From Macrostomum lignano (Eukaryota): a DNA stretch of 64,000 nucleotides. Below the pieces are notes generated by a model that was not told the DNA's origin, did no database searches, and saw only the letters and a program-made list of their open reading frames with translations. Every line of letters starts with the position of its first letter. The stretch's first letter is position 1. This document shows positions 1 through 49,675 of the stretch, one piece after another. A program made the position numbers and the translations under genes. The stretch is taken from contig NIVC01000573.1 in assembly GCA_002269645.1 (NCBI GenBank), positions 186,001 through 250,000 on the forward strand, read 5' to 3'.

Positions 1-3000
1 CCCCGGCTGTCTTTGACCCTAATCTGCCCCCGGCTGTCTTTGACCCTAATCTGCCCCCCGCTGTCTTTGACTCTAATCTGCCCCCCGGCTGTCTTTGACT
101 CTAATCTGCCCCCGGCTGTCTTTGACCCTAATCTGCCCCCGGCTGTCTTTGACTCTAATCTGCCCCCCGGCTGTCTTTGACTCTAAACTGCCCCCCGGCT
201 GTCTTTGACCCTAATCTGCCCCCGGCTGTCTTTGACTCTAATCTGCCCCCCGGCTGTCTTTGACCCTAATCTGCCCCCCCGGCTGTCTTTGACTCTAATC
301 TGCCCCCCGGCTGTCTTTGACTCTAATCTGCCCCCCGGCTGTCTTTGACTCTAATCTGCCCCCCGGCTGTCTTTGACCCTAATCTGCCCCCCGGCTGTCT
401 TTGACTCTAATCTGCCCCCCGGCTGTCTTTGACCCTAATCTGCCCCCCGGCTGTCTTTGACTCTAATCTGCCCCCCGGCTGTCTTTGACTCTAATCTGCC
501 CCCCGGCTGTCTTTGACTCTAATCTGCCCCCCGGCTGTCTTTGACTCTAATCTGCCCCCGGCTGTCTTTGACCCTAATCTGCCCCCGGCTGTCTTTGACT
601 CTAATCTGCCCCCGGCTGTCTTTGACTCTAATCTGCCCCCGGCTGTCTTTGACTCTAATCTGCCCCCGGCTGTCTTTGACCCTAATCTGCCCCCGGCTGT
701 CTTTGACTCTAATCTGCCCCCGGCTGTCTTTGACTCTAATCTGCCCCCGGCTGTCTTTGACTCTAATCTGCCCCCGGCTGTCTTTGACTCTAAATTGCCC
801 CCGGCTGTCTTTGACCCTAATCTGCCCCCGGCTGTCTTTGACTCTAAACTGCCCCCGGCTGTCTTTGACTCTAAACTGCCCCCCGGCTGTCTTTGACTCT
901 AATCTGCCCCCGGCTGTCTTTGACTCTAATCTGCCCCCCCGGCTGTCTTTGACTCTAATCTGCCCCCGGCTGTCTTTGACTCTAATCTGCCCCCCCGGCT
1001 GTCTTTGACCCTAATCTGCCCCCCGGCTGTCTTTGACTCTAATCTGCCCCCGGCTGTCTTTGACCCTAATCTGCCCCCCGGCTGTCTTTGACCCTAATCT
1101 GCCCCCGGCTGTCTTTGACCCTAATCTGCCCCCGGCTGTCTTTGACCCTAATCTGCCCCCGGCTGTCTTTGACTCTAATCTGCCCCCGGCTGTCTTTGAC
1201 CCTAATCTGCCCCCGGCTGTCTTTGACCCTAATCTGCCCCCGGCTGTCTTTGACCCTAATCTGCCCCCGGCTGTCTTTGACCCTAATCTGCCCCCGGCTG
1301 TCTTTGACCTAATCTGCCCCCGGCTGTCTTTGACCCTAATCTGCCCCCCGGCTGTCTTTGACCCTAATCTGCCCCCCGGCTGTCTATGACTCTAATCTGC
1401 CCGCCGGCTGTCTTTGACCCTAATCTGCCCCCGGCTGTCTTTGACCCTAATCTGCCCCCGGCTGTCTTTGACCCTAATCTGCCCCCGGCTGTCTTTGACC
1501 CTAATCTGCCCCCGGCTGTCTTTGACCCTAATCTGCCCCCGGCTGTCTTTGACCCTAATCTGCCCCCCGGCTGTCTTTGACCCTAATCTGCCCCCCAGCT
1601 GTCTTTGACCCTAATCTGCCCCCGGCTGTCTTTGACCCTAATCTGCCCCCCGGCTGTCTTTGACTCTAATCTGCCCCCGGCTGTCTTTGACCCTAATCTG
1701 CCCCCGGCTGTCTTTGACCCTAATCTGCCCCCGGCTGTCTTTGACCCTAATCTGCCCCCGGCTGTCTTTGACCCTAATCTGCCCCCGGCTGTCTTTGACC
1801 CTAATCTGCCCCCGGCTGTCTTTGACCCTAATCTGCCCCCGGCTGTCTTTGACTCTAATCTGCCCCCGGCTGTCTTTGACCCTAATCTGCCCCCGGCTGT
1901 CTTTGACCCTAATCTGCCCCCCGGCTGTCTTTGACCCTAATCTGCCCCCGGCTGTCTTTGACCCTAATCTGCCCCCCGGCTGTCTTTGACTCTAAACTGC
2001 CCCCGGCTGTCTATGACCCTAATCTGCCCCCGGCTGTCTTTGACTCTAATCTGCCCCCGGCTGACGTCTTTGACTCTAATCTGCCCCCGGCTGTCTATGA
2101 CCCTAATCTGCCCCCCGGCTGTCTTTGACTCTAAACTGCCCCCGGCTGTCTATGACCCTAATCTGCCCCCGGCTGTCTTTGACTCTAATCTGCCCCCGGC
2201 TGACGTCTTTGACTCTAATCTGCCACCGGCTGTCTTTGACCCTAATCTGCCCCCCGGCTGTCTTTGACCCTAATCTGCCCCCCGGCTGTCTTTGACCCTA
2301 ATCTGCCCCCCGGCTGTCTTTGACCCTAATCTGCCACCGGCTGTCTTTGACCCTAATCTGCCCCCCCGGCTGTCTTTGACTCTAATCTGCCCCCGGCTGT
2401 CTTTGACCCTAATCTGCCCCCCGGCTGTCTTTGACTCTAATCTGCCCCCGGCTGTCTTTGACCCTAATCTGCCCCCCGGCTGTCTTTGACCCTAATCTGC
2501 CCCCCGGCTGTCTTTGACCCTAATCTGCCCCCCGGCTGTCTTTGACCCTAATCTGCCCCCCGGCTGTCTTTGACTCTAATCTGCCCCCGGCTGTCTTTGA
2601 CCCTAATCTGCCCCCCGGCTGTCTTTGACCCTAATCTGCCACCGGCTGTCTTTGACCCTAATCTGCCCCCCGGCTATGACCCTAATCTGCCCCCGGCTGT
2701 CTTTGACCCTAATCTGCCCCCGGCTGTCTTTGACCCTAATCTGCCCCCGGCTGTCTTTGACCCTAATCTGCCCCCGGCTGTCTTTGACCCTAATCTGCCC
2801 CCGGCTGTCTTTGACCCTAATCTGCCCCCGGCTATGACCCTAATCTGCCCCCGGCTGTCTTTGACCCTAATCTGCCCCCCGGCTGTCTTTGACCCTAATC
2901 TGCCCCCCGGCTGTCTTTGACCCTAATCTGCCCCCGGCTGTCTTTGACCCTAATCTGCCCCCCGGCTGTCTTTGACCCTAATCTGCCCCCCGGCTGTCTT

Positions 3001-4410
3001 TGACCCTAATCTGCCACCGGCTGTCTTTGACCCTAATCTGCCACCGGCTGTCTTTGACCCTAATCTGCCCCCCGGCTATGACCCTAATCTGCCACCGGCT
3101 GTCTTTGACCCTAATCTGCCCCCCGGCTATGACCCTAATCTGCCCCCCGGCTGTCTTTGACCCTAATCTGCCCCCCGGCTGTCTTTGACCCTAATCTGCC
3201 CCCCGGCTGTCTTTGACCCTAATCTGCCCCCCGGCTGTCTTTGACCCTAATCTGCCCCCCGGCTGTCTTTGACCCTAATCTGCCACCGGCTGTCTTTGAC
3301 CCTAATCTGCCCCCCGGCTTGACCCTAATCTGCCCCCGGCTGTCTTTGACCCTAATCTGCCCCCGGCTGTCTTTGACCCTAATCTGCCCCCGGCTGTCTT
3401 TGACCCTAATCTGCCCCCCGGCTGTCTTTGACTCTAATCTGCCCCCCGGCTGTCTTTGACCCTAATCTGCCCCCCGGCTGTCTTTGACCCTAATCTGCCA
3501 CCGGCTGTCTTTGACTCTAATCTGCCACCGGCTGTCTTTGACCCTAATCTGCCCCCCGGCTGTCTTTGACCCTAATCTGCCCCCCGGCTGTCTTTGACTC
3601 TAATCTGCCCCCGGCTGTCTTTGACCCTAATCTGCCCCCGGCTGTCTTTGACCCTAATCTGCCCCCGGCTGTCTATGAGCCTAATCTGCCCCCGGCTGTC
3701 TTTGACCCTAATCTGCCCCCCGGCTGTCTTTGACTCTAATCTGCCCCCCGGCTGTCTTTGACCCTAATCTGCCCCCGGCTATGACCCTAATCTGCCCCCG
3801 GCTATGACCCTAATCTGCCCCCGGCTATGACCCTAATCTGCCCCCCGGCTATGACCCTAATCTGCCCCCGGCTATGACCCTAATCTGCCCCCCGGCTATG
3901 ACCCTAATCTGCCCCCGGCTATGACCCTAATCTGCCCCCGGCTATGACCCTAATCTGCCCCCGGCTATGACCCTAATCTGCCCCCGGCTATGACCCTAAT
4001 CTGCCCCTCGGCTATGACCCTAATCTGCCCCCCGGCTATGACCCTAATCTGCCCCCCTGGCTGTCTTTGAACCTAATCTGCCCCGCCCCGCTGTCTATGA
4101 CCCTAATCTGCCCCCCACTCGGCTAAGACCCTAATCTGCCCCCCCCCTGCTATGACCCTAATCTGCCCCCTGGCTGTCTTTGAACCTAATCTGCCTGCAG
4201 CTGTCTATGACCCCAATCTGCCCCTCCCCGCGGCTGTCTTTGACCCCAATCTGCCCCTCCCCGCGGCTGTCTATGACCCTAAATCTGCCCCCCCCGGCTG
4301 TCAATGACTCAATCTGCCCTCGGCTGTTTATGACTCTAATCTGCCCCCGGCTGTTTGACATTAATCTGCTCCCGGCTGTCTATGATCCTAATATGTCCCC
4401 CGGCTATGAC
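1..4410. repeat. 27-28 bp minisatellite (ccccggctgtctttgaccctaatctgc) in ALG8 intron 9, truncated by the window start
   Basis: Visible tandem array. A 22-23 bp deletion variant dominates ~3780-4050 and the edge degenerates by ~4410. Confidence 0.98.
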
Positions 4411-24201: not shown

Positions 24202-25938
24202 TCATCGTTCAAACATCACCCAGCCGGTACTGTTGAACTCTGCTTCAACTGAGGCCAGATCAAAGTTGATGAAGTGGCATCTGGCCTGAGCGGCGTTGAA
24301 GAGAAATGCCCTGCAGTGAAGGCTGTATCTACACAGCAGAGCGCAGTGGCCTTGAGACCTGACCTGGGTGTTGGACTCCCGCGAGCAGTACTCATTGGCC
24401 GAGTCGATTGGAACATTGGTCAGATGGCGGAACATCGAGGCCTGAGCAAAGCTGTGCCGACCCTGCTCGCACACGTAGTAATAGTTGTTGGAGCAGTGGC
24501 TGTTCGACTGGCGGAACGGGCCGGCGCTGGTCTCCGCGTTGAGGGCCAGGCAGTCGTCGCGTCCGCTGGTCCAGTAGGGCCGATTCGGAGTCCACTGAGT
24601 CTCTGCTGGCATCTCATGGCCTTCGGTGCTCATCCAGCCCAGCTTGCTGGTGCGGACCTTTGCCAATGAGGAATTCGGGAAGTTGCCTAATAGCATGGGA
24701 TCCATCCTAGAGTATGGAATCTGGCAGTGAGTGTGGTGTATGGGATCTATAGCAGTGTGCTGTATGGGATCTAGCAGTGTGGTACAGGAGATCTAGCAGT
24801 GTGGTACAGGAGATCTAGCAGTGTGGGGTGTGGGATCTAGCAGTGTGATGTATGGGATCTAGCACTGTGGTGTATGAGATCTAGTAGTGTGGTGTATGAA
24901 ATCTAGCAGTGTGGTGTATGAGATCTAGCAGTGTGCTGTATGAGATCTAGCAGTGTGCTGTATGAGATCTAGGAGTGTGGTGTATGGAATCTAGCAGTGT
25001 GGTGTATGGGATCTAGCGGCGTGGTGTCTGGGATCTAGCAGTGTGGTGTATGAGATCTAGTAGTGTGGTGTATGAGATCTAGCAGTGTGGTGTATGGGAT
25101 CTAGCGGCGTGGTGTCTGGGATCTAGCAGTGTGGTGTATGAGATCTAGTAGTGTGGTGTATGAGATCTAGCGGTGTGGTGTATGAGATCTAGCGGTGTGG
25201 GGTGTGGGATCTAGCAGTGTGGTGGTGTATGGGATCTATAGCAGTGTGTTGTATGGGATCCATCCGTGTGGTGTATGGGATCTAGCAGTGTGGTGTATGG
25301 GATGATCTAACAGTGTGGTGTATGGGATGATCTAGCAGTGTGGTGTATGGGATCTATAGCAGTGTGGTGGTGTATGGGATCTATAGCAGTGTGGTGTATG
25401 GGATCTAGCAGTGTGGTGTATGGGATCTATAGCAGTGTGGTGGTGTATGGGATCTAGCAGTGTGGTGTATGGGATCTAGCAGTGTGGTGTATGGGATCTA
25501 GCAGTGTGGTGTATGGGATCTAGCAGTATGGTGTATGAGATCTAGCGGTGTGGTGTATGAGATCTAGCGGTGTGGTGTATGGGATTTATCGCTTGAGAGT
25601 ATGAGATTTTTTAGCTCAGAAAAAAAGGCAGTCCAGGTCAGGAAATTCTGAATCACCTCAGTCAGCAGGTCGGTGTAGCCAATCCAGTACCGAGTTCGCT
25701 GGTTCAGATCCGACATCAGTCGTTGGATCACATGCGGTGACGTCACAAGCCGGCCGCCGATGCCGCTGGAGGCAGCCTGGGCGCCGCACCAGGTGTCTGG
25801 CTGGACTGTTTCGGTTCGCACGCAGGTGAAATTGTCGCCCAGCAGCCTGGGAAAATCTGGGTCGCAACTACCGGTAGCTGCCGCTGAGCTGAAAACTGCT
25901 GCCAAGGTGCTGAGCAAAGTCCAGAATCTACTCTTCAT
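24202..25938 (-). CDS. Secreted C-type lectin-like + PAN/apple domain protein. Exons 25938-25657 and 24657-24202
   Basis: Signal peptide MKSRFWTLLSTLAAVFSSAAA; CTLD motifs GGRLV, YWIGYTD, DDCLAL and YYYVCE; C-terminal CALLC...CRAFLF...CHF PAN pattern; phase-0 GT-AG intron. Confidence 0.85.
24715..25585. repeat. ~22 bp minisatellite (gatctagcagtgtggtgtatgg) filling the lectin intron
   Basis: Visible tandem array. Confidence 0.96.
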
Positions 25939-28000: not shown

Positions 28001-29043
28001 TCATGGTGAGAAGCGATCAGGCGCGCGGCATGCACGGGTGCTACGGCGGGGCAACGCAGCCCCATGCTCCTGGCTTGGACCCTCCTGTCCCGTAGCAGGG
28101 TCTTCGTCTCTTGAGTCCTCGTCGACGTTCGGAACTGGAGCATCGGTTTCATAGCTATCCTCCTCGTCGGTGGCGAATGGATCGGCCGCGGGCGCCAGTT
28201 GGTTTGTACTGGCCAGGTGCAATCCATTTTTAGCCGGAATCCATGCGGTGTTGCGCCCTGACGTCATTAGAAATGTGGCTGAGTTGGTGCTTGCGGAGGC
28301 GGTAGGCCGATACATGACGCCGTCACCTTGCTCAAAGTGCGTCACCACCGGTACTCTGAGCTTTTTGCCGAACAGTATCTCGGCCGGGCATTGCCCCGCG
28401 ACGATGCTGAGTTCCGATGGTGGAGCAGCACTTTCTGCAGAAAATGGCTGAATTCCATGTGCGTAATTCTCTCTGACCACGCGCGCAGTGCAGCTTTGAC
28501 GGTCTGTACAGCGCGTTCGGCCGCTCCGTTTGCCTGTGGATAATAAGCTGGCGATTCAAGTTTATGGACACCATTGGCCCGTAGCCAAGAGTAGAGGGGA
28601 TCACCGATGAACTCTGGTGCATTATCGGACACTACCAGCTCGGCCACTCCAAAGCGTGCGAACACTGCGTGCAAACACTGCATAACTGATTCGCCAGTTC
28701 TATTCCGACAAGGGAATGCCTCTATCCAGCCAGAAAATGTGTCAACGATGACTAGAATGTTACCGGCGTCCTTCACATAGGCCCAGTCCATATGGATACG
28801 TTGAAACGGGTACGAAGCTGCCGGCCAGTGGTCTCTGTCATTTCCCAAGCGAGGTCGCAAGTGGCAACAGCCTGGGCAGCGCTGGACAAACTGGGTTACA
28901 TCCTGCTGCATGCCAGGCCACCAGCAGGACGCTGAGAGCAGGTTGTACGAAGCTTGTGCACCTGAATGGGTGTCATGAACGGCCTCAAACGCTGCCTTGC
29001 GCAGCCGCGGTGGTATAAACACGCGTCTCTGTATATAGAGAAG
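28001..29043 (-). CDS. Gypsy pol 3' part (integrase), one frameshift near 28400
   Basis: VHDTHSG...CWWPGM...RCPGC Zn finger; IHMDW, VVSDNAPEF and NGAAERAV (DDE core). Confidence 0.92.
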
Positions 29044-29328
29044 GCACGCGAAGGCGTATTCAGCATGCCAGTGAAGTATGAGACAGACTAGGCCTACGAG
29101 CTAAGGTCTGCGATGCTTCACGCCTGCCCCCATCTTCAGCAGGTCAAGGCTGGTGGGAGGTCTGCACCCTCTATTTGCCTCTGGCAGCCGCAGACTCCCC
29201 CACGCTGTCTCGCAAGTCGACCCAGGGGTACTCGTCCCCGCGTGTGTTCAAGGCAGACCCTAGGGCTGCTGGACAGACTGGGCTCCGGCGCTGGCGACCC
29301 TATCCAGTGGCTTCGGCCGAATTTGGGT
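29044..29328 (+). ncRNA. Predicted HDV-like self-cleaving ribozyme at the LINE 5' end
   Basis: P1 gcacgcg (29044-50) / cgcgtgt (29239-45) with G1-U wobble; P2 acccag (29220-25) / ttgggt (29323-28); P3 ggg/ccc closing L3 tactcgt; P1.1 ac (29230-31) / gt (29246-47); J4/2 cgaat with the catalytic-C equivalent at 29318. Confidence 0.82.
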
Positions 29329-29533
29329 ATGCGGGTCTGGCTCACCAGCCTGCAGGCCGTGGTACTGCTTAACGTACCCTCTAATGCCTAAGGTGTTTGA
29401 CCGTGCCGATGGGCTGGAAGGCCGGGGAGTAGTCCGGTCGCTAGCGGTCCTTTTTTCAAACCGGCTGGCTTGAGGTGTCGGCCAGTCGGGTACTCAACTC
29501 GCATAACGAGTAGCCCTCCCCCGCTTTTCAGCT

Positions 29534-31063
29534 ATGGCCACTAACGCCACCATCCCTAAAGAAACTGACCCGGTCGCCTCTGGCTCACCGGGATCAGCCG
29601 CTCCGGTAGCTACCACTGGTAGCACCAACGCCCAACCTGGTCCAACCGGGCCAGCTGACGCTGCCGCCGATCACCCTGGCCGCCAGTCTAGCCGACCGCG
29701 CACGGCCGAGTCTCGACGACAGCGGAACATCCGCCGCAACCGTAAGCGGCAGGAGAAGCGGGCTGCTGCTGCGTCTGAGGAGGGCACGCAAGCCGCGGTG
29801 AGGCCTTCGGGAGCCACCGCAGCGGGGAGGCCCTCTGGGGAGTCCGGTGGCGCGGCTGGGCCGTCAGGAACCGCCGTGTCCTCGGGCTCTCAGGGGGGCA
29901 ACCCTGCCGGCCTACCGCCTTCCAAAGACAAAGCGGCCCCGCTCAAGACCTCCGAGTCCTACGCGTCCAAGGTCAAGCAGCCGCTGCAACCCGCCGTGAT
30001 GATCCTCGGCGGGGATTTCGACCTGACGCCCGAGCAGCTCGACGTCGCGTGGCGTACCATCGACGAGGGCTTGCTCAATCTAACCCTGGAGGGCGTCTTC
30101 GTGGACATCGTCAAGTCCACCAAGGCGAACGGGTGCATCCTACTGTGGTGCAAATCCGAGGAGAGCACCCAGCTCCTGCGGGATCAGCTGCCCAAGTTCG
30201 ACTGGCACAGCGACCTGGGCCAGCTGACCTTCGCCTTGGAGAGCGAGCGGCCGAAGACCATCCGCCATCGGATTTGGGTCCCGGCCGACAGTGCAATCAA
30301 GTCCGGGGAGCAGCTGCGGCAGCTCCTGCTCAAGCGGCACCCGGATCTCGACGCCAGTGGTCTTGTGTACCACAGCACGGTCCGCAAGGGCACGACCGGG
30401 GCCACAGTCATCCTCGGCCTGACGGAGGGATGGGCCAAGCGGCTACCGCACGGCACAAACCTCCACCTTGGTCTCCATCAACTGACCATCCTCCGCTGTG
30501 AGGAGGGCAAGGTGGAGACCAAGAAAGACGGGAAGCGCGCCGCTCCCGGAGCTGGGGCTCATGCCCCGCCGGCCAAGCGGCAGCAGCAACCCGATCCCGA
30601 GCCTAACAAGGCTATTCGCGCTGCTGAGTCCGCCTCGCGCGGACGTAGACCCGCCCGCAGTAGCCGGCGGTCCGGTCTAATCCAGCGCGCACTTGACGAA
30701 GCTCAGTCTCTGAGACTTCACCTCGAGCAGACTCGTGCCGCTCGAAAAAACACTGAAAGCCAGCCGAGGGAACTGGACGACGGCACGGCTCAGCCTTCCA
30801 ACTGGTGGGATTACCACCAGGAGGACGCTGCCGGCCGAGCTCAGACTCCCGACGGCGGGGCGCAAGGCGAAGGCAGCAGCCGTACCCCAGTCGCTGGGGA
30901 GGAGGGCGGTGTAGCGCGGCTAGGTGACTCACCTGCCGTGGGCGCCGTGTCCGCCTCCGCGGCGGCTGGGGAGGCGGCTGAGCCTGAGCCAATGGAAATT
31001 GGCGACTCAACTCTCACCGATGAGGCTGAGAATGAGTTGCTTTTCTCCTCCCCTGGACAGTAG
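29534..31063 (+). CDS. LINE ORF1 (gag-like; central region reminiscent of the DUF4780 domain of R1/LOA ORF1s)
   Basis: Intact 509-aa ORF ending 2 nt before the ORF2 ATG. Confidence 0.88.
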   Translation: MATNATIPKETDPVASGSPGSAAPVATTGSTNAQPGPTGPADAAADHPGRQSSRPRTAESRRQRNIRRNRKRQEKRAAAASEEGTQAAVRPSGATAAGRPSGESGGAAGPSGTAVSSGSQGGNPAGLPPSKDKAAPLKTSESYASKVKQPLQPAVMILGGDFDLTPEQLDVAWRTIDEGLLNLTLEGVFVDIVKSTKANGCILLWCKSEESTQLLRDQLPKFDWHSDLGQLTFALESERPKTIRHRIWVPADSAIKSGEQLRQLLLKRHPDLDASGLVYHSTVRKGTTGATVILGLTEGWAKRLPHGTNLHLGLHQLTILRCEEGKVETKKDGKRAAPGAGAHAPPAKRQQQPDPEPNKAIRAAESASRGRRPARSSRRSGLIQRALDEAQSLRLHLEQTRAARKNTESQPRELDDGTAQPSNWWDYHQEDAAGRAQTPDGGAQGEGSSRTPVAGEEGGVARLGDSPAVGAVSASAAAGEAAEPEPMEIGDSTLTDEAENELLFSSPGQ

Positions 31064-31065
31064 AC

Positions 31066-34000
31066 ATGACTGTCTCCCAGGGCATCCACTGCTTGCAGGT
31101 CAACCTGCAGCACAGCATTGCTGCTTCAGTCAACCTCTTGAAGCACACTGACCAATACGTGCCAGGGATTATCCTTATCCAGGAACCTTGGACGCTTAGG
31201 GGCAGCCCCCAACATGTCCCCACCGGCTACCAGTGTTTAACCGCTGGTACCCGGGAGGGAAACCTGGCACCAAGATCCTGCATCATGGTGTCCAGTTCTA
31301 TTAACGCATGGCTCAGATCAGACCTGTCCACCAGGGACATCTGTGTCATCCAGTCTGAAGACATACTCCCTGGGAGGACTACCCTCATCGCCTCGGTTTA
31401 CCTACCGGGCGACGGCGAGATGATCCCAGTAGAGCTTGTCACACTGGTCGAGCTCTGCTCCACCAGAAACTATGAGCTGCTCGTGGCAGGTGACATCAAT
31501 GCCCACCACACCCACTGGGGCAGTTCTGATATAAACCAGAGAGGTGAAGACTTCCTGGCTTATATTGCTACTACAACCCTTGAGTTCTGTAACTCGGGTA
31601 GTACCCCTACCTTCAATAACGGACGCCGATCGGAGGTGCTGGATGCCACCCTCGCCACGCCCAGGCTCTTCCAGAGCACTAGGGAATGGCGGGTGCTTCC
31701 TGAGGCGTCCCTCTCCGATCACAAGTTCATCTCTTTCACGCTGGCCAGCGCCCGTAACGCAGGCCAGCTTTACTGGAAACGGAATGCTAGGAATACCGAC
31801 TGGACCGCCTTCAGGCTTGCCCTGGAGGAGACCTATCGTTGCACTAGCGCTCCAGTCTCCATCAACACCTGCGAAGAAGCAGATGAATTTGCGGCCGCAC
31901 TTACGGACTCGCTCACTGCTGCCTTCGAAGCCTCATGCCCACTAAAGGCATATAAAGGCAAACAGTCGGCCCCATGGTGGAACCCGCAGCTTGGCGACCT
32001 CCGTCGCAGAGCCAAAAGGCTTCACCGCAGGGCCCAAAAAACTAAAAACCCGGCCGACCAAACCGCCTACCTGAACTCTATCCACGAGTTCAAGAGGCAG
32101 GTTAGGAACGCCAAAACCAACAAGTGGCGCGAATACTGTGAGGAACTTGAGGGCTCCCGCCCCACCTCCAGAATCGTTAAAGCCCTCACCCTGGACAAAA
32201 TGTCCAAACTCTCCTCAGTCAAGAGAGCCGACGGCTCGCTCACTGAGAACCCAGGAGAAACACTGGAAGCGATGCTAACAGCGTTTTTCCCGAACGAGCC
32301 AGCTAGGCCCGGCCCCCTGACCACTCAGTGGGCGGACACGTACTGGCTGACTCAATCATCACGGAGGACCGCGTTACTAAAGCTGTCTCCTCCTTCAAAC
32401 CCTTCAAATCCCCAGGACCGGACGGCGTTGTGCCAGCCTTCCTGCGGGAGGCGGTGAAATGCACCGGTTTCCTGCGGAACCTTTGCCGGCTTCTGAAAGC
32501 CTGCATTGTGCTCGGCTTTGTTCCGAAATCCTGGACCGAGGCCAAGGTGGTCTTTATCCCCAAGCCTGGCCGACCGGACTACCGGTCCATTAAATCCTTC
32601 AGACCAATTAGCCTCACCTCCTCATTGGTGAAGCTGTTAGAGAGACTGGTGCTCTGGCGCCTCCTCTCTGTGGAACTGAAGAACAAGCCGCTCAGTGAGA
32701 ACCAGCATGCCTTTCGGGCAGGCAGGTCCACGGAGAGCGCGCTTCACGTTCTGGTTGACATGCTGGAGAAAGCCGTTCTTGGTAATGGCTACGCTCTCGC
32801 TGTCTTCCTCGACATTGTTGGAGCCTTCGATAATGTCCTCTTTGAGGCCTTTGACAGAGCTCTACGTGCTAGAGGAACCCACTCGCACCTCACCCGGTGG
32901 ATCATGTATATGATCAGCCACCGTACTGCCACCGCACACCTGTTGGGCCACCAACGGACGGTAACCGTCTGCAAAGGCAGCCCCCAGGGCGGTGTCCTCT
33001 CTCCAGTTCTCTGGAACATGGTCATCGATGAGCTCCTCCAGGACAGCCATCTTGACCCCATCCTCAAGGTCGGTTACGCCGATGATGTCACAGCCGTGGC
33101 ATCCGGACCGTCACCTGAAACCCTTAGAGATCTTTTGCAAAACTTCATTCGCTCTGCTGAACGTTGGGCGGACAGGTGCGGCCTCAGGCTCTCCGAGACC
33201 AAAACTGTCGCGATCATGTTCACCAGCAGGGTAAACTGGCGTATTCGCCCACTAAAGCTTTACGGGTGGAAATTCCATCCTGCAAGCAAACCAAGTGTCT
33301 CGGCGTTACGCTGGACCACCGGCTGAGCTGGTCCACCCACGTCCAGGCCAAAACCAAAAAAGCCCTCGCGATTCTTGCGCAGCTGCGCAGAGCCGTCGGC
33401 ACCACCTGGGGCCTCACCCCAAAGCGTCTCTGGTGGATCTATACCGCAATGGTCCGACCGGCCGTTACATACGCCGGCCTGGTCTGGACCAGCGCCTTGC
33501 AGATTAAAACCTGCCACGAAGCCCTCAAAAAGGTGCAGGGACGTGCGTGCCGCATGATCCTGAATGCCCCGCTCTCTGCTCCCTTTGACGGCCTCAACGC
33601 CTTTCTCTGCCTCCCGCCTCTGGACATCTTTGTCCGTCGCGAGGCTGCTAAAACCACCCGCCGGCTCATCGAGGCTGGTGTTAGCTTCAAGCCACAAAGA
33701 GCGATGGCGAAGCGCAAGCTCCTGCCGCACTCTGACCTGTGCCTTAAAGTTCTGGAGGAGAGTGGGAGTGCGGCTGTCCTTTCGGACGCTGAACCGCGCT
33801 CCCTCAACCTCTACCAACGCTTCAAGGTCACGATCCCCTCCAGGGAGAACGCCAACGACAGCTGGGCCCCTCAGGAGGTTCACTGCTTCACTGACGGATC
33901 CTCCAAAGACGGTTTATCCGGCTTTGGAGTCTGCATCCTTATCAACGGCCGCGTGATTGCTACTCACGCCCAACACACTGGCAGACTCTCCAGCGTCTTC

Positions 34001-34768
34001 CAGAATGAAGTCCTTGCCATCAGCTCCTGTGCAGCTGAGCTCCACCGCAAGGACTTCAAGGACAAAAGAATCTTCTTCCACTCTGACAGCCAGGCCGCTT
34101 TACAGGCCCTGTGTCACACCACTACGAACTCCCGAACAGTCCGCGACTGTATCGGGCAGCTCAACAAGCTGGCTCGGAGGAACACCGTCCGGCTCACGTG
34201 GATCCCAGGACACGCCGGCTTCAAAGGTAACGAGCTCGCCGACTCCCTCGCTAAGGCGGGCTGTTCCGGCTCGCCCCTTGGCCCCGTGCCCCTGGCCCCC
34301 ATCCCCGCCACAGTCATTAATCGTCAGATTAACGACTGGGCGGACATCCTGCACTTGCGCAGATGGGATGGTATCTCCAACTGCCGCCAATCTCGTGCGG
34401 CAGTGCCCAATCCGTCCCTCAAGCTGCGGAGAATCCTTTTGAATCAAAATCGAAAAGATATCCGCGCTCTCACTATGACCTTCACAGGTCACGGTTGCTT
34501 TGCCAGGCACTGCTTCCTCCGATGTGTTCGCCGGAGTGAACTCTGCCCCTTCTGCAGCCTCGAGAATGAAGATGCCATGCACTTCGTCTGCTACTGCCCG
34601 GCCTTCAACCGAGACCGGCTCAACCACCTCGGGCCCAACCCGTCCCTGGACGACGTTTGCCGGCCCGAGAACATCCCACGGCTCATCCGGTTCCTCCGGG
34701 CCACCAAGCGAGCCTCCGTCTTCCCCACCGAAGACAACGCTGCAGACAGGACCGGCAGACCTCCCTGA
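31066..34768 (+). CDS. LINE ORF2 (AP endonuclease, reverse transcriptase, RNase H, CCHC) with two 1-bp frameshifts (~32315, ~33255)
   Basis: LQVNLQHS, LIQEPW, GDINAHH and SDH (APE); KGSPQGGVLSP and YADD (RT); FTDGS, FQNEV, HSDSQAAL, WIPGHAGFKGNELAD (RNase H); CPFCSLENEDAMHFVCYC. Confidence 0.95.
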
Positions 34769-34879
34769 CCGGCCCCGCGCCCTAGCCTATGCGGGTCTTT
34801 CAGGGATTAGCGGAATGGGCGACGCTCGCCTCCCCGCTGCGTCTTCGGACCGCCCTGCAGCTAAGTCAAGTAAGTCAAA

Positions 34880-37706
34880 GTATATAGAGAAGCCCGTTCT
34901 CCAGCGTTAGTGTCTCCGCAACCTTCTTGAAGGATGCCTCTGCCTGACTGCAACTCCTCCAATTGCCGGAGCGTACACGCTCCAAGATGCGTTGAGCGAA
35001 CGCGTCAGTACTCAGTTCGGCTGCAACCCTATCTGCGTCAATCACCGGTGCCTCAAAAGCCACAGCATTAATAGCTTCAAACGTCTCCTTGTCGTCCGAG
35101 GTGCAGTCGTCAAAGCGCAGTCTAGAAATTGCGTCAGCATGGGGAATGCTGCTCCCTCGCGCGTACCGGATGTCAAAGTCGAACTGCATTAAGTACATGG
35201 CCCAGCGGCCAATCCTCGCTGACGTATTTAGCGGAATCCCGCTTCCATAGAGGCGCAGTAGCGGCTGATCATCTGTCTGAATCACGAACTTGCGACCGTG
35301 TAGGAAATGCTTGAGTCGGGAGACGGCCCAGAAGATTGCAAGTGCTTCGCGTTCGATGTTTGAATAGTTGCTTTCAGCGGCCGAAAGGGTACGGGAGACG
35401 TATATTACCGGATGACCCTCCTGCGTTGCCACGGCGGCGAGTGCACCTTTGGACGCATCTGTCGTCAGAATCAGCTCTTTAGTCAGACTGTATGGCTGCA
35501 CGACCGGCGCAGATGCAATCTCCGCTTTCAGATTATTGAAGGCTCGGGAACACTCGTCTGACCAGGTGAACGGAATGCCAGCCTTTCGCAGTCTGTTAAG
35601 CGGAGCAGTTTTGCCTGCAAAGTTCGGAATCAATCGTCCGAAGAAATTGACTAGACCTAGAAACTGGGAGAGCTCCGTCTTGTTTTTCGGTACGCATACA
35701 TGGCGAATCTTCTCTACGAGACGCACGTCTGGCTGGATTCCGGCGGCGGAAATCCGGAAGCCTAGAAATGACACAGAGTCAGAGTAGTTGATGCACTTGG
35801 ATTCGTTTATAGTCACTCGCTTCTCGGTGAGGCGCTTCCTGACTGCCGCTAGTCGCTTCTCCAAGACGACTGCGTCCGGTGCGTGTACGAGAATATCATC
35901 TTGGTAGATGAGTAGACCTTTAATATCACCCAAAATGGACTCCATTGTGCGTTGGAGGATGAAGGAAGCGTTCTTCATCCCCATTTGAAGCCTATTGACG
36001 CGGTAGAGCCCCCGGGATGTGTTTATTACGGATAAATCCCGAGCGGAATCATCCAGTTCGATCTGCCAATAGGCAGAACGCAAATCCACAGTAGCGAATG
36101 TCTTTGAATTCTTGAGCCGTGAGAACATCGTCTCGACGTTTGGAATGGGGTAGGAATCTGATTGGATTTTTGCGTTAACGTGTACGCTATAGTCGGCACA
36201 CATTCTTAATGAGCCATCCTTCTTCTTCACCCACACGACGGGCGACGCGTTGTTGACAGGGCCCTCAATGGGCTCGATGACGCCCAACATTTGCAATCGA
36301 TCCAGCTCCGCGTTGATCTTGGCCTCCAGTGCGATTGGTACGGGCCGAGCCCTACAAAACTGTGGCCTGGCTCCGTCCACGAGCTCCATTTTGGCTTTCA
36401 CGCCCTTAATTGTCGGCAGAGGTTCCACAGCCTGCTGGATGTAAGATGGCAAGGCCGTAGCGTGAAAGAGTTTATCTGACTGCAGTAGATCACGGCCGAT
36501 AAGACCATGAGCCTTGCTTGAGGCAACAACCATAAGCTCTGCTGGGTGCAAACGTCCTCGGAGCTGCACAGCGGTGCACAATTTGCCCAGTGTACGCATG
36601 ACGTGACCATCAAAGGCCTCAAGGCGGCGAAAGCATTTTTGCAGGTGCGGGCGACCCAGCGAAATCCACTGCGCACTTGAAATCACTGAGACAGACGCCC
36701 CAGTATCAACCTGCATCCTCAGGCTTCTGCCATCGACGACCACCGTTTCGATAGTCTCGCTGATAGCGTGCACAGAACTTGCGTCGGTGAGGTGCATGAT
36801 GGATCCCGGTGAATGAGCTGGCTCTTCGCCCTCGTCACCTTGGTCTGCCGTCGTGTGGTGCAGCGAACGAGTAGCTCCAGATCTGCAGACGTTGCTAAAA
36901 TGATTCTTTTTTCCGCACTTCATACAGGTTTTTCCGTAGGCCGGACATTTACCTTCGAGGTGGGACCTACCGCAATAACGACAGGTGGAATTAGTTCGCC
37001 GGGCACTATCGTGTTGAGCCGATTCCATCCTGGGTACGGAACGCTGCTTGGTGAAGTGTAGCGAGACTTCTTCAGCGCCGATATGGCTGGGAGAGGATGC
37101 ACCAATGGCACATGGCATAGCAGAAGCAATTCCACTACTCGGGAGCTCCTTCTGACTAGAGACAAAGTTTGTCACCTGCTCCAAATTGCGGATGAAATTT
37201 ACGATTTCCGTTGTTGAAAGCTTCTGTAACTGCATGGCCTCTAGCACGCGTAGCTGCTCCTGACTGTCTCGAAGTCCAGCGATCAGCGCCATTCGAATCA
37301 ACTCTTCCGATGGGCTTTGGCTCGAGCGTAGAGAGTCGAATTTGCAATCGATTGCGGCATGACGAAGTCGGCTCACAAAGTCGCCAATGGACTCGCTAGG
37401 CGCTTGACGAACGTTGAAGAACCGCGCCCTCTCCGCCACGGTCAGTTTCTCTCTGGGTCGTAGGTAGTCCAGTAGTGTTTTCTCAATGTCCGCAAACGAC
37501 AGGTCGGCTACAAGTCGTGGAGACACAAGATCTTGCAATTTTTCAAGTGCAGTCAGACCGCAGCAAGCTAGGAAATTGTCAGCGATGCATTTCTTTTCTG
37601 CAGTGTCAGTCCATCCTTTCGCTCTGGCCAACGCTTGGAAGGCAGTCAGCCATGTTTGCGCCCTCTCCGGCTTTTCGAGCGGCAGGTTGCCGAGTTGCGA
37701 CGCCAT
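34880..37706 (-). CDS. Gypsy gag-pol 5' part (Gag CCHC, protease, RT, RNase H)
   Basis: CRYCGRSH...CMKCGKKNHFSNVC; VDTGASVS; YQDD; LTTDAS, YSNIEREAL and HADAISR. Confidence 0.96.
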
Positions 37707-39120: not shown

Positions 39121-45819
<6,699 letters not shown>

Positions 45820-47834: not shown

Positions 47835-49675
47835 CTGGATTTAAGGGATTCTATGGAATTTAAGGGACTGTGAGGAATTCCGGTGATTTTATGTAATTCA
47901 GGAGGGAATACCAAGCTATTCAGAAAGATTCCAAGGGATTCAGGGGGTTCCAAGGATTCAGGGGATTCCAAAGGTTTCAGGGGGGTTCCAAGGGATTCAG
48001 AGGGTTCCAAGGGATTCAGGGGGATTCCAAAGGATTCAGGGGATTCTAAAGGATTCAGGGGGATTCCAAGGGATTCAGGGGATTCCAAGAGATTCAGGGG
48101 GATTCCAAGAGATTCAGGGGGATTCCAAGAGATTCAGGGGGATTCCAAAGGATTCAGGGAGATTCCAAAGGATTCAGGGGGATTCCAAAGGATTCAGGGG
48201 GATTCCAAGAGATTCAGGGGGATTCCAAGAGATTCAGGGGGATTCCAAGAGATTCAGGGGGATTCCAAAGGATTCAGGGGGTTCCAAAGGATTCAAGGGG
48301 ATCCTGGGGATTCAGGGGGATTCCAAGAGATTCAGGGGGATTCCAAAGGATTCAGGGGATTCTAAAGGATTCAGGGGGATTCCAAGGGATTCAGGGGGAT
48401 TCCAAGAGATTCAGGGGGATTCCAAGAGATTCAGGGGGGTTCCAAGGGATTCAGGGGGTTCCAAGGGATTCAGGGGATTCCAAGGGATTCAGGGGGGTTC
48501 CAAGGGATTCAGGGGGATTCCAAAGGATTCAGGGGGATTCCAAGAGATTCAGGGGGATTCCAAGGGATTCAGGGGGATTCCAAGAGATTCAGGGGGATTC
48601 CAAGGGATTCAGGGGGATTCCAAGAGATTCAGGGGGATTCCAAGGGATTCAGGGGGATTCCAAGAGATTCAGGGGGATTCCAAGAGATTCAGGGGGATTC
48701 CAAAGGATTCAGGGGGGTTCCAAAGGATTCAAGGGGATCCTGGGGGATTCAGGGGGATTCCAAGAGATTCAGGGGGATTCCAAAGGATTCAGGGGGATTC
48801 TAAAGGATTCAGGGGATTCCAAGGGATTCAGGGGGATTCCAAGAGATTCAGGGGGATTCCAAGAGATTCAGGGGGGTTCCAAGGGATTCAGGGGGTTCCA
48901 AGGGATTCAGGGGGATTCCAAGGGATTCAGGGGGGTTCCAAGGGATTCAGGGGGATTCCAAAGGATTCAGGGGGATTCCAAGAGATTCAGGGGGATTCCA
49001 AGGGATTCAGGGGGATTCCAAGAGATTCAGGGGATTCCAAGGGATTCAGGGGGATTCCAAGAGATTCAGGGGGATTCCAAGGGATTCAGGGGATTCCAAG
49101 AGATTCAGGGGATTCCAAGAGATTCAGGGGATTCCAAAGGATTCAGGGGGTTCCAAAGGATTCAAGGGGATCCTGGGGATTCAGGGGGATTCCAAGAGAT
49201 TCAGGGGGATTCCAAAGGATTCAGGGGGATTCTAAAGGATTCAGGGGGATTCCAAGGGATTCAGGGGGATTCCAAGAGATTCAGGGGGATTCCAAGAGAT
49301 TCAGGGGGTTCCAAGGGATTCAGGGGGTTCCAAGGGATTCAGGGGGATTCCAAGGGATTCAGGGGGATTCCAAGGGATTCAGGGGGATTCCAAAGGATTC
49401 AGGGGGATTCCAAGAGATTCAGGGGGATTCCAAGGGATTCAGGGGATTCCAAGAGATTCAGGGGGATTCCAAGGGATTCAGGGGATTCCAAGAGATTCAG
49501 GGGGATTCCAAGGGATTCAGGGGATTCCAAGAGATTCAGGGGGATTCCAAGGGATTCAGGGGGTTCCAAGGGATTCAGGGGATTCCAAAGGATTCAGGGG
49601 GATTCCAAGAGATTCAGGGGGATTCCAAGGGATTCAGGGGATTCCAAGAGATTCAGGGGGATTCCAAGGGATTAA
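47835..49675. repeat. 19-20 bp minisatellite (gggggattccaagggattca) with a ~435 bp higher-order period
   Basis: Visible array; the rare variant atcctgg occurs at 48301, 48737 and 49170. Confidence 0.97.

What the first reader, a model, noticed from the sequence alone, without database searches (positions are those of the whole stretch)
29044..29328. HDV-like ribozyme starting at the exact first base of an R1/LOA-like LINE, with a 169-nt J1/2 insert and a compensatory P1.1
Seen: the TSD fixes the element start at G29044. The first 7 nt (gcacgcg) pair fully, with the canonical G1-U wobble, to cgcgtgt at 29239-45. The other parts follow in HDV order: P2 acccag/ttgggt, P3 ggg/ccc, a 7-nt L3 tactcgt, and J4/2 cgaat. 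L3 has A in place of the usual first C, and the P1.1 partner is GT instead of GG, so the pairing is preserved. J1/2 (29051-29219) folds into hairpins (e.g. gtgaagtat/atgcttcac), and P4 looks like a multibranch junction. Established: HDV-like ribozymes process the 5' ends of R2 and several other non-LTR families. Inference: this is an active ribozyme that frees the LINE RNA from read-through host or Gypsy transcripts, and may be an undescribed variant for this lineage.
Basis: partly seen in the sequence, partly recalled or inferred. Interest (0 to 1): 0.85.

Follow-up and report, generated by a model that had tools for sequence, protein, structure and literature searches.

The report
Self-cleaving ribozyme at a LINE's start
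The first 285 bases of a jumping gene (a LINE retrotransposon) have all the sequence hallmarks of a hepatitis-delta-type self-cutting RNA that would trim the element's transcript to its exact first base; this is a convincing new example of a mechanism already known from other LINEs, not a new kind of ribozyme.

Summary
A perfect 13-bp target-site duplication, and a Gypsy integrase reading frame that closes when the insert is removed, fix the LINE at 29044-34879. Its first 7 nt pair 7/7 (G1·U) with 29239-45, directly after a GGG-UACUCGU-CCC hairpin. P2 and a C-G-A-A J4/2 follow in HDV order. With P1 anchored at that independently defined first base, dinucleotide shuffles of the 5' UTR matched in 78, 5 and 0 of 30,000 trials at three stringencies. 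The only relative found (metagenome contig L001, ORF1 53% identical) keeps P2, P3, six of seven L3 bases, the J1/4 G and the proposed catalytic C. That contig starts inside J1/2, so P1 covariation cannot be checked. Rfam models give no hit. I conclude, at about 0.8, that this is a genuine HDV-like 5'-processing ribozyme. It is a new member of a known kind. J1/2 loops of 216-498 nt, variable or absent P4, one-pair P1.1 and cleavage at the element's 5' end are all published for R2, baggins, R4/Dong and L1Tc. The "compensatory P1.1" is not confirmed by the relative, and the Gypsy lies on the opposite strand. Cleavage itself is untested.

The parts
29031..29043 (+). Upstream copy of the 13-bp target-site duplication GTATATAGAGAAG
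   Evidence: Identical to 34880-92. Joining the flanks restores the Gypsy integrase ORF.
29044..34879 (+). Whole non-LTR retrotransposon (5' UTR, ORF1, ORF2 with APE-RT-RNase H, short 3' UTR)
   Evidence: Bounded by the TSD. Domains from Pfam. No other copy in the window.
29044..29050 (+). P1 5' strand GCACGCG; predicted cleavage is between 29043 and 29044
   Evidence: Pairs 7/7 with 29239-45, G1·U wobble, -10.4 kcal/mol. Anchored shuffle tests.
29051..29219 (+). J1/2 peripheral domain, 169 nt, folding on itself with its two ends brought together
   Evidence: MFE -62.9 kcal/mol, z = -1.76, 9/200 shuffles as good. Contains the 9-bp hairpin 29071-79/29113-21. The 3' third is conserved in L001, including the identical 17-mer at 29176-92.
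29220..29225 (+). P2 5' strand ACCCAG
   Evidence: Pairs with 29323-28. ACCCA is identical in L001. P2 and P3 appear in the unconstrained MFE fold.
29226..29228 (+). P3 5' strand GGG
   Evidence: Pairs with 29236-38; identical in L001.
29229..29235 (+). L3 loop UACUCGU (U1, C3 and G6 as in HDV-like cores; A at position 2)
   Evidence: L001 has UUCUCGU, 6/7 identical. PMC3774820 reports conserved C and G sites in L3, both changed in the one R2 ribozyme found inactive in vitro.
29236..29238 (+). P3 3' strand CCC
29239..29245 (+). P1 3' strand CGCGUGU, directly after P3
   Evidence: L001 has CGCGAGC, so the differences fall only at positions that pair with element nt 1 and 3.
29246..29247 (+). 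J1/4 GU, partners of L3 C29231 and A29230 (P1.1)
   Evidence: Read from the sequence. GU is identical in L001, where only the G-C pair can form.
29248..29317 (+). Enlarged P4 region holding several hairpins: GGCAGACC/GGGCUGCU, CUGG/CCAG and C(UUCG)G
   Evidence: The pieces are conserved in L001, but no clear closing helix was found.
29318..29322 (+). J4/2 CGAAU with the proposed catalytic C29318
   Evidence: L001 has C-A-A-A at the same place. Decoy cores with A, G or T are not found at the strict level on this strand.
29323..29328 (+). P2 3' strand UUGGGU
29329..29533 (+). Rest of the 5' UTR: conserved, structured RNA upstream of the ORF1 AUG
   Evidence: Identical 30-mer at 29420-49. Hairpin 29361-78 has two compensatory pairs versus L001.
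29534..31063 (+). ORF1, 509 aa, no known domain
31066..34768 (+). ORF2 (APE, RT, RNase H), split over three frames in this copy
   Evidence: Pfam. Frameshift at about 32277-32304 relative to the uninterrupted ORF2 of L001/L002.
34860..34879 (+). 3' end GCTAAGTCAAGTAAGTCAAA (short repeated motif, no poly(A))
34880..34892 (+). Downstream copy of the TSD

Best explanation
Window 29044-29328 encodes an HDV-like (delta-type, nested double-pseudoknot) self-cleaving ribozyme that forms the 5' end of a non-LTR retrotransposon.

Proposed mechanism:
1. A sense-strand transcript that starts upstream of the element is made. This could be host or antisense-Gypsy read-through, or an imprecise start of the element's own transcription.
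2. The first seven nucleotides pair with 29239-45 to form P1.
3. The 169-nt J1/2 domain folds on itself and brings P1 next to P2.
4. P3/L3, a short P1.1 (C29231-G29246, possibly A29230-U29247) and J4/2 form the active site.
5. C29318 and a bound Mg2+ catalyse attack of the 2'-OH of nt 29043 on the 29043/29044 phosphodiester.
6. The LINE RNA then starts exactly at G29044 with a 5'-OH. Full-length reverse transcription of that RNA explains why the inserted copy begins at that base.
7. The conserved, structured UTR downstream (29329-29533) plausibly supports translation of the uncapped RNA.

Shown here: the anatomy, the coincidence with the TSD-defined terminus, its statistical significance, and conservation of the core in a relative. 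Inferred: catalysis, the source of the precursor transcript, and the translation role.
For: - The exact element start is fixed by a 13/13 TSD and by restoration of the Gypsy integrase ORF.
- All helices and junctions are in HDV order with canonical lengths: P1 7 bp starting at +1 and abutting P3, P3 3 bp, L3 7 nt with U1/C3/G6, G after P1', C-G-A-A before P2'.
- Anchored shuffles matched in 78, 5 and 0 of 30,000 trials at three stringencies. The strict core occurs once in the window against 0.12 expected.
- P2 and P3 appear in the unconstrained MFE fold. Forcing P1 costs little (-99.9 kcal/mol before adding P2, against -110.9).
- Relative L001 (ORF1 53%, ORF2 72-81% aa identity) keeps P2 5/5, P3 3/3 on each strand, L3 6/7, J1/4 2/2, the proposed catalytic C and P2' 5/5. 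The differences in P1' fall only at positions pairing with element nt 1 and 3.
- The -1 nucleotide (G29043) cannot extend P1.
- Precedent: HDV-like ribozymes cleave at the 5' end of R4, Dong, baggins and L1Tc. R2 tolerates J1/2 of 216-498 nt and a variable or absent P4 (PMC3774820). Structured J1/2 domains accelerate drz-Agam-2 (PMC4908430). An active L1Tc ribozyme has a one-pair P1.1 (PMC3185411).
Against: - No Rfam family matches at gathering score or at E <= 10, in the window or in L001. Large J1/2 and P4 inserts and narrow family models may explain this.
- Only one relative carries the region, and its contig begins inside J1/2, so the key P1 covariation is unseen. P2 and P3 are invariant and so say nothing either way.
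- In L001 the second P1.1 pair is U·U, and two unpaired A's lie between P2 and P3.
- The P4 region has no clear closing helix, and the C(UUCG)G hairpin could sequester C29318.
- J1/2 folding is only marginally better than shuffles (z = -1.76).
- This copy is decayed: ORF2 is frameshifted and there is an A·G mismatch in the first P4 hairpin.
- The strict descriptor was written after seeing the candidate.
- No cleavage data exist.
Confidence: 0.8

Rival explanations
1. Chance look-alike. The 5' UTR is conserved because it is an internal promoter and/or another structured RNA, and the HDV-like arrangement, including the terminal 7-nt pairing, is coincidental.
For: - Loose HDV descriptors hit about once per kb in this window, and decoys with A, G or T at the catalytic position are as frequent as C.
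- The whole 5' UTR, not only the core, is conserved with L001 (72% identity).
- There is no Rfam hit.
- A second 7/7 partner for the P1 3' strand lies in the flank at 29019, which shows that such matches do occur by chance.
Against: - Anchored at the independently defined first base, only 5/30,000 (moderate) and 0/30,000 (strict) shuffles match.
- The strict core is unique in 128 kb.
- L3, the J1/4 G and the proposed catalytic C, the positions that matter for catalysis, are kept in L001, while the outer P1' positions vary.
Confidence: 0.07
2. Genuine family ribozyme but a relic. The fold descends from an HDV-like ribozyme, but this copy (or the lineage) no longer cleaves efficiently, and the 5' end is now set mainly by an internal promoter.
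For: - The copy is decayed: ORF2 is frameshifted, and the first P4 hairpin has an A·G mismatch and a G·U where L001 pairs perfectly.
- L3 position 2 is unusual, and P1.1 is weak or variable.
- P4 architecture is uncertain.
- Some retrotransposon HDV-like folds that look adequate are inactive in vitro (PMC4035085).
Against: - All catalytic-core positions are intact and P1 is perfect in this very copy.
- The TSD is perfect, so the insertion is young.
- A copy that starts exactly at P1 nt 1 is what ribozyme processing predicts.
Confidence: 0.1
3. A different cleavage site. The functional P1 is a compact internal one just upstream of P2, as L001's GCUCGC (76-81) suggests. The terminal pairing in the window would then be secondary or a recent shift.
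For: L001 has a 6/6 Watson-Crick partner of its own P1' only 6 nt upstream of P2. This is the canonical compact layout, and it is the only match of 6/7 or better in the 87 nt available.
Against: - The homologous window segment UCUCGCA pairs only 4/7 with the window P1' (read; recorded in the notebook).
- Internal cleavage would discard about 165 nt that are conserved between the two elements and therefore inherited.
- The window terminus pairs 7/7.
Confidence: 0.03

Closest known systems
R2 retrotransposon HDV-like ribozymes (insects, other animals)
   Same: - Double-pseudoknot ribozyme in the 5' UTR of a non-LTR element that releases the element RNA from a co-transcript.
- Very large J1/2 loops (216-498 nt in silkmoths; P1 and P1' up to more than 700 nt apart).
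- P4 variable or absent; P1 6-7 bp; P2 at least 5 bp.
- Only the catalytic C and four other positions are rigidly conserved (PMC3774820).
- The 5' UTR has been proposed to act as an IRES (PMC6765202).
   Different: R2 is site-specific (28S rDNA), has a single ORF with a restriction-like endonuclease, and often cleaves upstream within the 28S sequence. This element is an APE-RT-RNase H LINE with two ORFs, inserted in a Gypsy element, and cleavage is predicted at its own first base.
baggins1 (LOA clade), R4 and Dong 5'-end ribozymes
   Same: [quoted passage not shown]
   Different: The clade of this LINE is not resolved.
L1Tc / ingi-clade ribozyme (L1TcRz, Pr77)
   Same: A dispersed LINE encoding APE, RT and RNase H, flanked by TSDs of about 12 bp, with an HDV-like ribozyme starting at +1. 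P1.1 has 1-2 pairs, and upstream flank sequence can interfere with folding (PMC3185411, PMC6765202).
   Different: L1TcRz is compact (77 nt), starts with C1 and doubles as an internal promoter. This candidate spans 285 nt, with a 169-nt J1/2 and a 70-nt P4 region, and starts with G1·U.
drz-Agam-2 family (mosquito)
   Same: Large natural HDV-like ribozymes with a structured J1/2 peripheral domain (P1.2) that brings P1 and P2 together (PMC4908430).
   Different: Here the closing helix of J1/2 is short (GCG/CGC plus CAGC/GCUG in the MFE fold) and only weakly supported. There are no kinetic data.

Membership tests
HDV-like self-cleaving ribozymes | Strand order P1-J1/2-P2-P3-L3-P3'-P1'-J1/4-P4-J4/2-P2' (nested double pseudoknot) | tested here: met
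   Direct reading. Descriptor scans recover exactly this arrangement at 29044/29226/29323.
HDV-like self-cleaving ribozymes | P1 of 6-7 bp whose first nucleotide is the cleavage site, with its 3' strand directly following P3 | tested here: met
   7/7 pairs with G1·U, -10.4 kcal/mol. C29239 abuts C29238.
HDV-like self-cleaving ribozymes | 3-bp P3 closing a 7-8 nt L3 that carries the conserved C and G | tested here: met
   GGG/CCC with L3 UACUCGU. L001 has UUCUCGU. Conserved C and G sites in L3 per PMC3774820.
HDV-like self-cleaving ribozymes | P1.1: 1-2 pairs between L3 and the nucleotides right after P1' | tested here: met
   C29231-G29246 plus A29230-U29247 in the window. L001 has only the C-G pair (U·U second). 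A one-pair P1.1 is active in L1Tc (PMC3185411).
HDV-like self-cleaving ribozymes | Unpaired catalytic C at the start of J4/2, followed by N-A-A, then P2' | tested here: met
   C29318-G-A-A-U then UUGGGU. L001 has C188-A-A-A then UGGGU. Caveat: C29318 could pair with G29309 at the base of the UUCG hairpin.
HDV-like self-cleaving ribozymes | P2 of at least 5 bp | tested here: met
   5 Watson-Crick pairs plus 1 G·U (-6.8 kcal/mol). The 5 bp are identical in L001.
HDV-like self-cleaving ribozymes | Helices supported by compensatory changes among homologues | tested here: inconclusive
   Only one homologue was found. P2 and P3 are invariant. P1' differs at two positions, but the matching 5' strand lies beyond the end of contig L001. 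All further collection scans were empty.
HDV-like self-cleaving ribozymes | Recognised by curated covariance models of the family (Rfam) | tested here: not met
   No hit at gathering score or at E <= 10 in the window or L001. The models are of compact, specific subfamilies. A test on a construct without the J1/2 and P4 inserts could not be run.
HDV-like self-cleaving ribozymes | Mg2+-dependent site-specific self-scission giving 5'-OH and 2',3'-cyclic phosphate, abolished by C-to-U at the catalytic C | not testable with these tools
   Needs bench work.
5'-end processing ribozymes of non-LTR retrotransposons | Ribozyme +1 coincides with the first base of the element as defined by its insertion junction | tested here: met
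   TSD and empty-site reconstruction put the start at G29044, which is P1 nt 1. Chance is about 0.002-0.004 per position.
   Pfam Exo_endo_phos_2, RVT_1 and RNase_H. The only PDB sequence match of the endonuclease is TRAS1 (R1 clade), E = 9e-11.
   ORF1 has no Pfam or PDB match, only 3 Cys and no CX2CX4HX4C motif.
   No reference set of classified LINE RTs is available in the tools.

The most novel reading that the evidence does not exclude
The family may record a ribozyme cleavage-site shift that lengthened the element. The relative L001 still carries an intact compact P1 (GCUCGC) 6 nt upstream of P2. In the window element that internal site has decayed, and the P1 3' strand instead matches a terminus 165 nt further upstream. 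This would be 5' extension of a dispersed LINE by re-targeting of P1, as was modelled for R2 within rDNA. The flank site ACACGCG at 29019-25 would be a candidate for the next such shift.
Probability: 0.12. Interest if true: 0.55.

Novelty: new member of a known kind. Interest (0 to 1): 0.38.

Why it matters
It adds a well-delimited example of HDV-like 5' processing in a LINE family that is barely represented in public data: one relative among 5.8 billion proteins. The host is possibly a flatworm, since the nearest named ORF2 relative is from Macrostomum lignano. The insertion junction gives independent evidence for the cleavage site. It supports the view that delta-type ribozymes are a common solution for promoter-independent 5'-end definition in dispersed LINEs that encode APE, RT and RNase H. 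It also offers a natural large-J1/2, large-P4 variant for folding studies. It does not change what is known about the ribozyme class.

Tried and rejected
- Rfam. A whole-window scan at gathering score and three focused E <= 10 scans (window 28900-29500, window 29205-29340, L001 60-205) gave no HDV-family hit.
- Other copies in the window. blastn with the element and tblastn with its ORFs found none.
- Protein searches. ORF1 (whole, and region 140-400) gave only P0001. The ORF2 endonuclease part gave four hits, the closest named one from Macrostomum lignano.
- Context look-ups. L001 starts inside J1/2. L002 has only 157 nt upstream of ORF1. L003 lacks the 5' region. The window ORF1 and P0002 are not on record.
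- Collection scans, all empty: a 21-mer UTR anchor in the metagenome, genome and viral collections; a degenerate core pattern in the genome and viral collections; an ORF1 alignment in the metagenome and viral collections.
- Loose descriptor without anchoring. Rejected as evidence because C and non-C decoys are equally frequent and minisatellites generate hits.
- The idea that the large J1/2 or the odd P4 makes this a new variant. Rejected on the literature (PMC3774820, PMC4908430).
- Clade assignment by phylogeny. Not possible without reference sequences.
- Papers not held in the library: Ruminski et al. 2011, the Webb & Lupták 2011 review, and Eickbush & Eickbush 2010.

Full report
**What is at the coordinates**

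- P1: GCACGCG (29044-50) is fully complementary, with a G29044·U29245 wobble, to CGCGTGT (29239-45).
- P2: ACCCAG (29220-25) pairs with TTGGGT (29323-28).
- P3: GGG (29226-28) pairs with CCC (29236-38) and closes the 7-nt loop TACTCGT.
- J1/4 is GT (29246-47), directly after the P1 3' strand. J4/2 is CGAAT (29318-22), directly before the P2 3' strand.
- Helix energies are -10.4 (P1), -6.8 (P2) and -2.5 (P3) kcal/mol.
- The 169-nt J1/2 folds on itself, and the quoted 9-bp hairpin 29071-79/29113-21 is part of the minimum-free-energy structure.
- P2 and P3 form in the unconstrained fold of 29044-29328. Forcing P1 and P3 gives -99.9 kcal/mol before P2 is added, against -110.9 for the unconstrained pseudoknot-free optimum.

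**The element and its exact start**

ORFs and Pfam show a non-LTR retrotransposon on the plus strand.
- ORF1 is 29534-31063 (509 aa, no known domain).
- ORF2 carries an AP-type endonuclease (31066-32457), a reverse transcriptase (32328-33326) and RNase H (33164-34768). It is split over three frames.
- The element interrupts a Gypsy pol gene on the minus strand: protease-RT-RNase H at 37706-34875 and integrase at 29022-28342.
- The 13-bp GTATATAGAGAAG occurs at 29031-43 and at 34880-92. Joining 240 nt of each flank with one TSD copy removed gives an uninterrupted integrase frame.

The LINE is therefore 29044-34879. G29044 is its first base on evidence that is independent of any RNA motif. The 3' end is GCTAAGTCAAGTAAGTCAAA, with no poly(A).

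**Is it more than chance?**

A loose descriptor is uninformative in this window. That descriptor required a 7-bp P1, a 3-bp P3, a 7-8 nt L3, a 5-bp P2, C-N-A-A before P2', J1/2 up to 300 nt and P4 up to 150 nt.
- It gave 87 predicted cleavage sites in 128 kb.
- About 135 cores were found, and cores with A, G or T in place of the catalytic C were as common as cores with C.
- Many of the hits fall in minisatellites.

The informative test fixes P1 at the TSD-defined first base.
- Among 30,000 dinucleotide-preserving shuffles of the 490-nt 5' UTR, 78 matched the loose descriptor.
- Five matched when L3 C3, a G after P1' and C-N-A-A were also required.
- None matched when L3 U1 and G6 were added.
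- The strict core, scored without P1, occurs exactly once on either strand of the window, at 29226. Block-wise shuffles give 0.12 expected.
- Of about 470 positions upstream of P2, only two pair 7/7 with the P1 3' strand: the element's first base, and ACACGCG at 29019-25 in the Gypsy flank.

The strict descriptor was written with the candidate in view. The moderate level uses only positions that the literature calls conserved: five conserved nucleotides in about 50 (PMC4870747), and the catalytic C plus four rigid positions, including a C and a G in L3 and an A in J4/2 (PMC3774820).

**Comparative evidence**

No second copy exists in the window. Three protein searches found a single ORF1 relative.
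- It lies on a 4.1-kb JGI metagenome contig (L001) and on a 99.9% identical Logan contig (L002).
- ORF1 is 53% identical and ORF2 72-81% identical in amino acids.
- The 5' UTRs align at 72% identity.

In L001 the core is retained:

| Element | Window | L001 | Identical |
|---|---|---|---|
| P2 5' strand | ACCCA | ACCCA | 5/5 |
| P3 5' strand | GGG | GGG | 3/3 |
| L3 | UACUCGU | UUCUCGU | 6/7 |
| P3 3' strand | CCC | CCC | 3/3 |
| P1 3' strand | CGCGUGU | CGCGAGC | 5/7 |
| J1/4 | GU | GU | 2/2 |
| J4/2 | CGAA | CAAA | 3/4 |
| P2 3' strand | UGGGU | UGGGU | 5/5 |

The two P1' differences lie at the positions that pair with element nucleotides 1 and 3. This predicts an L001 terminus of GCUCGCG type. 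The L001 contig begins inside J1/2 (aligned to window 29133), and L002 has only 157 nt upstream of ORF1. The decisive covariation test therefore cannot be made. Every further scan was empty: a DNA anchor, a degenerate core pattern and an ORF1 profile, tried across the metagenome, genome and viral collections.

The A-U "compensatory" second pair of P1.1 is not corroborated. L001 has U at L3 position 2 with the same U partner. An active L1Tc ribozyme works with a one-pair P1.1 (PMC3185411), so this does not disqualify either sequence.

**Negative and awkward results**

- Rfam has no match at gathering score or at E <= 10, in the window or in L001. The 169-nt J1/2 and the 70-nt P4 region probably defeat models built on compact subfamilies. 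A trimmed construct could not be submitted to the tool.
- The P4 region has conserved hairpins: GGCAGACC/GGUCUGCC (perfect in L001, one A·G and one G·U in the window), CUGG/CCAG and a C(UUCG)G tetraloop hairpin. It has no obvious closing helix, and the last hairpin could pair C29318 with G29309.
- J1/2 folds only marginally better than shuffles (z = -1.76). Its ends are brought together by short helices, as in the "pinch" model for drz-Agam-2 (PMC4908430).
- The copy itself is decayed. ORF2 changes frame at about 32277-32304, where L001 and L002 read through.

**An unexplained feature**

L001 carries GCUCGC (76-81) just 6 nt upstream of its P2. This is a 6/6 Watson-Crick partner of its own P1', which is the layout of a compact HDV-like ribozyme. 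The homologous window segment UCUCGCA (29207-13) pairs only 4/7 with the window P1'. Possible readings are:
- chance, roughly 0.01-0.02 for that position range;
- a competing alternative helix;
- a relic of an ancestral compact P1 that preceded a shift of the cleavage site to a new, more distal terminus.

The last scenario was proposed for R2 (PMC3774820). It is my "most novel reading", at low probability.

**Mechanism**

I conclude, with confidence about 0.8, that this is a genuine HDV-like ribozyme.
1. It cleaves a longer sense transcript between 29043 and 29044, leaving LINE RNA that begins at G29044 with a 5'-OH.
2. Full-length reverse transcription of that RNA accounts for the copy's first base.
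3. The precursor cannot be the Gypsy's own sense transcript, because the Gypsy is on the other strand. It would be host or antisense read-through, or imprecise transcription of the element itself.
4. The UTR downstream of the ribozyme is conserved, with an identical 30-mer at 29420-49. A hairpin at 29361-78 has two compensatory pairs relative to L001. This indicates selection at the RNA level.
5. That fits the proposal that such 5' UTRs support translation of uncapped, ribozyme-processed RNA (PMC6765202). This last step is inference.

**Comparison with what is known**

- HDV-like ribozymes at the 5' ends of non-LTR elements are established for R2, R4, Dong, baggins (LOA clade) and L1Tc/ingi (PMC3774820, PMC3185411, PMC4035085).
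- R2 ribozymes have J1/2 loops of 216-498 nt and P1-P1' separations above 700 nt, with P4 variable or absent (PMC3774820).
- L1Tc is a dispersed LINE encoding APE, RT and RNase H, with TSDs of about 12 bp and a ribozyme at +1 (PMC6765202).

None of the features presented as unusual is new.

The clade label "R1/LOA-like" is plausible but unproven. The endonuclease's only PDB sequence match is TRAS1 of the R1 clade (E = 9e-11), and an RNase H domain is present. ORF1, however, lacks CCHC knuckles, and no RT phylogeny could be made. The host is unknown. The nearest named ORF2 relative is a Macrostomum lignano protein (60% identity over 35% of the query).

**Verdict**

This is a new member of a known kind, and interest is moderate (0.38). 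Its value lies in the clean junction evidence and in the rarity of the LINE family in public data. The decisive tests are a census of family 5' ends in the source genome and a C29318-dependent cleavage assay.

Noticed in passing
window 29019-29025: The Gypsy flank carries ACACGCG, a perfect Watson-Crick partner (-10.1 kcal/mol) of the ribozyme's P1 3' strand, 25 nt upstream of the LINE. In read-through RNA of this locus it could compete with the true P1 or redirect cleavage.
   Followed up: partly
L001 76-81 versus window 29207-29213: The relative L001 has an internal GCUCGC, 6 nt upstream of P2, that pairs 6/6 with its own P1 3' strand (a compact-ribozyme layout). The homologous window segment pairs only 4/7. 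This could be an alternative helix, or a relic of a cleavage-site shift.
   Followed up: partly
window 29329-29533: The 5' UTR downstream of the ribozyme is strongly conserved with L001. It has an identical 30-mer at 29420-49 and an 18-mer at 29477-94. A hairpin at 29361-78 has two compensatory pairs. L001 has two insertions, of 60 and 38 nt. This is likely a structured RNA, perhaps for cap-independent translation.
   Followed up: partly
window 32277-32304 and about 33164-33326: ORF2 of this copy changes frame twice. The first shift is confirmed against the uninterrupted ORF2 of L001 and L002. The copy is therefore probably non-autonomous despite its perfect TSD.
   Followed up: partly
window 29534-31063: ORF1 (509 aa) has no Pfam or PDB match, no CCHC knuckles and a low-complexity N-terminal 140 aa. 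Only one relative was found among 5.8 billion proteins, so this is an uncharacterised ORF1 type.
   Followed up: partly
window 34860-34879: The LINE ends in GCTAAGTCAAGTAAGTCAAA, a short repeated TAAGTCAA motif, rather than poly(A).
   Followed up: no
window 28342-29022 and 34875-37706 (minus strand): A Gypsy-type LTR retrotransposon pol gene (protease, RT, RNase H, integrase) is split by the LINE. The integrase frame is continuous once the LINE and one TSD copy are removed.
   Followed up: yes
whole window, e.g. 1-4405, 24730-25585, 43522-44281, 47896-49673, 57957-62579: The window is packed with at least 25 different minisatellite arrays of period 12-30 bp (up to 235 copies), plus long ATAG and GTCT microsatellites. 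They cause the strong strand-composition skews and most of the false hits of loose RNA descriptors.
   Followed up: no
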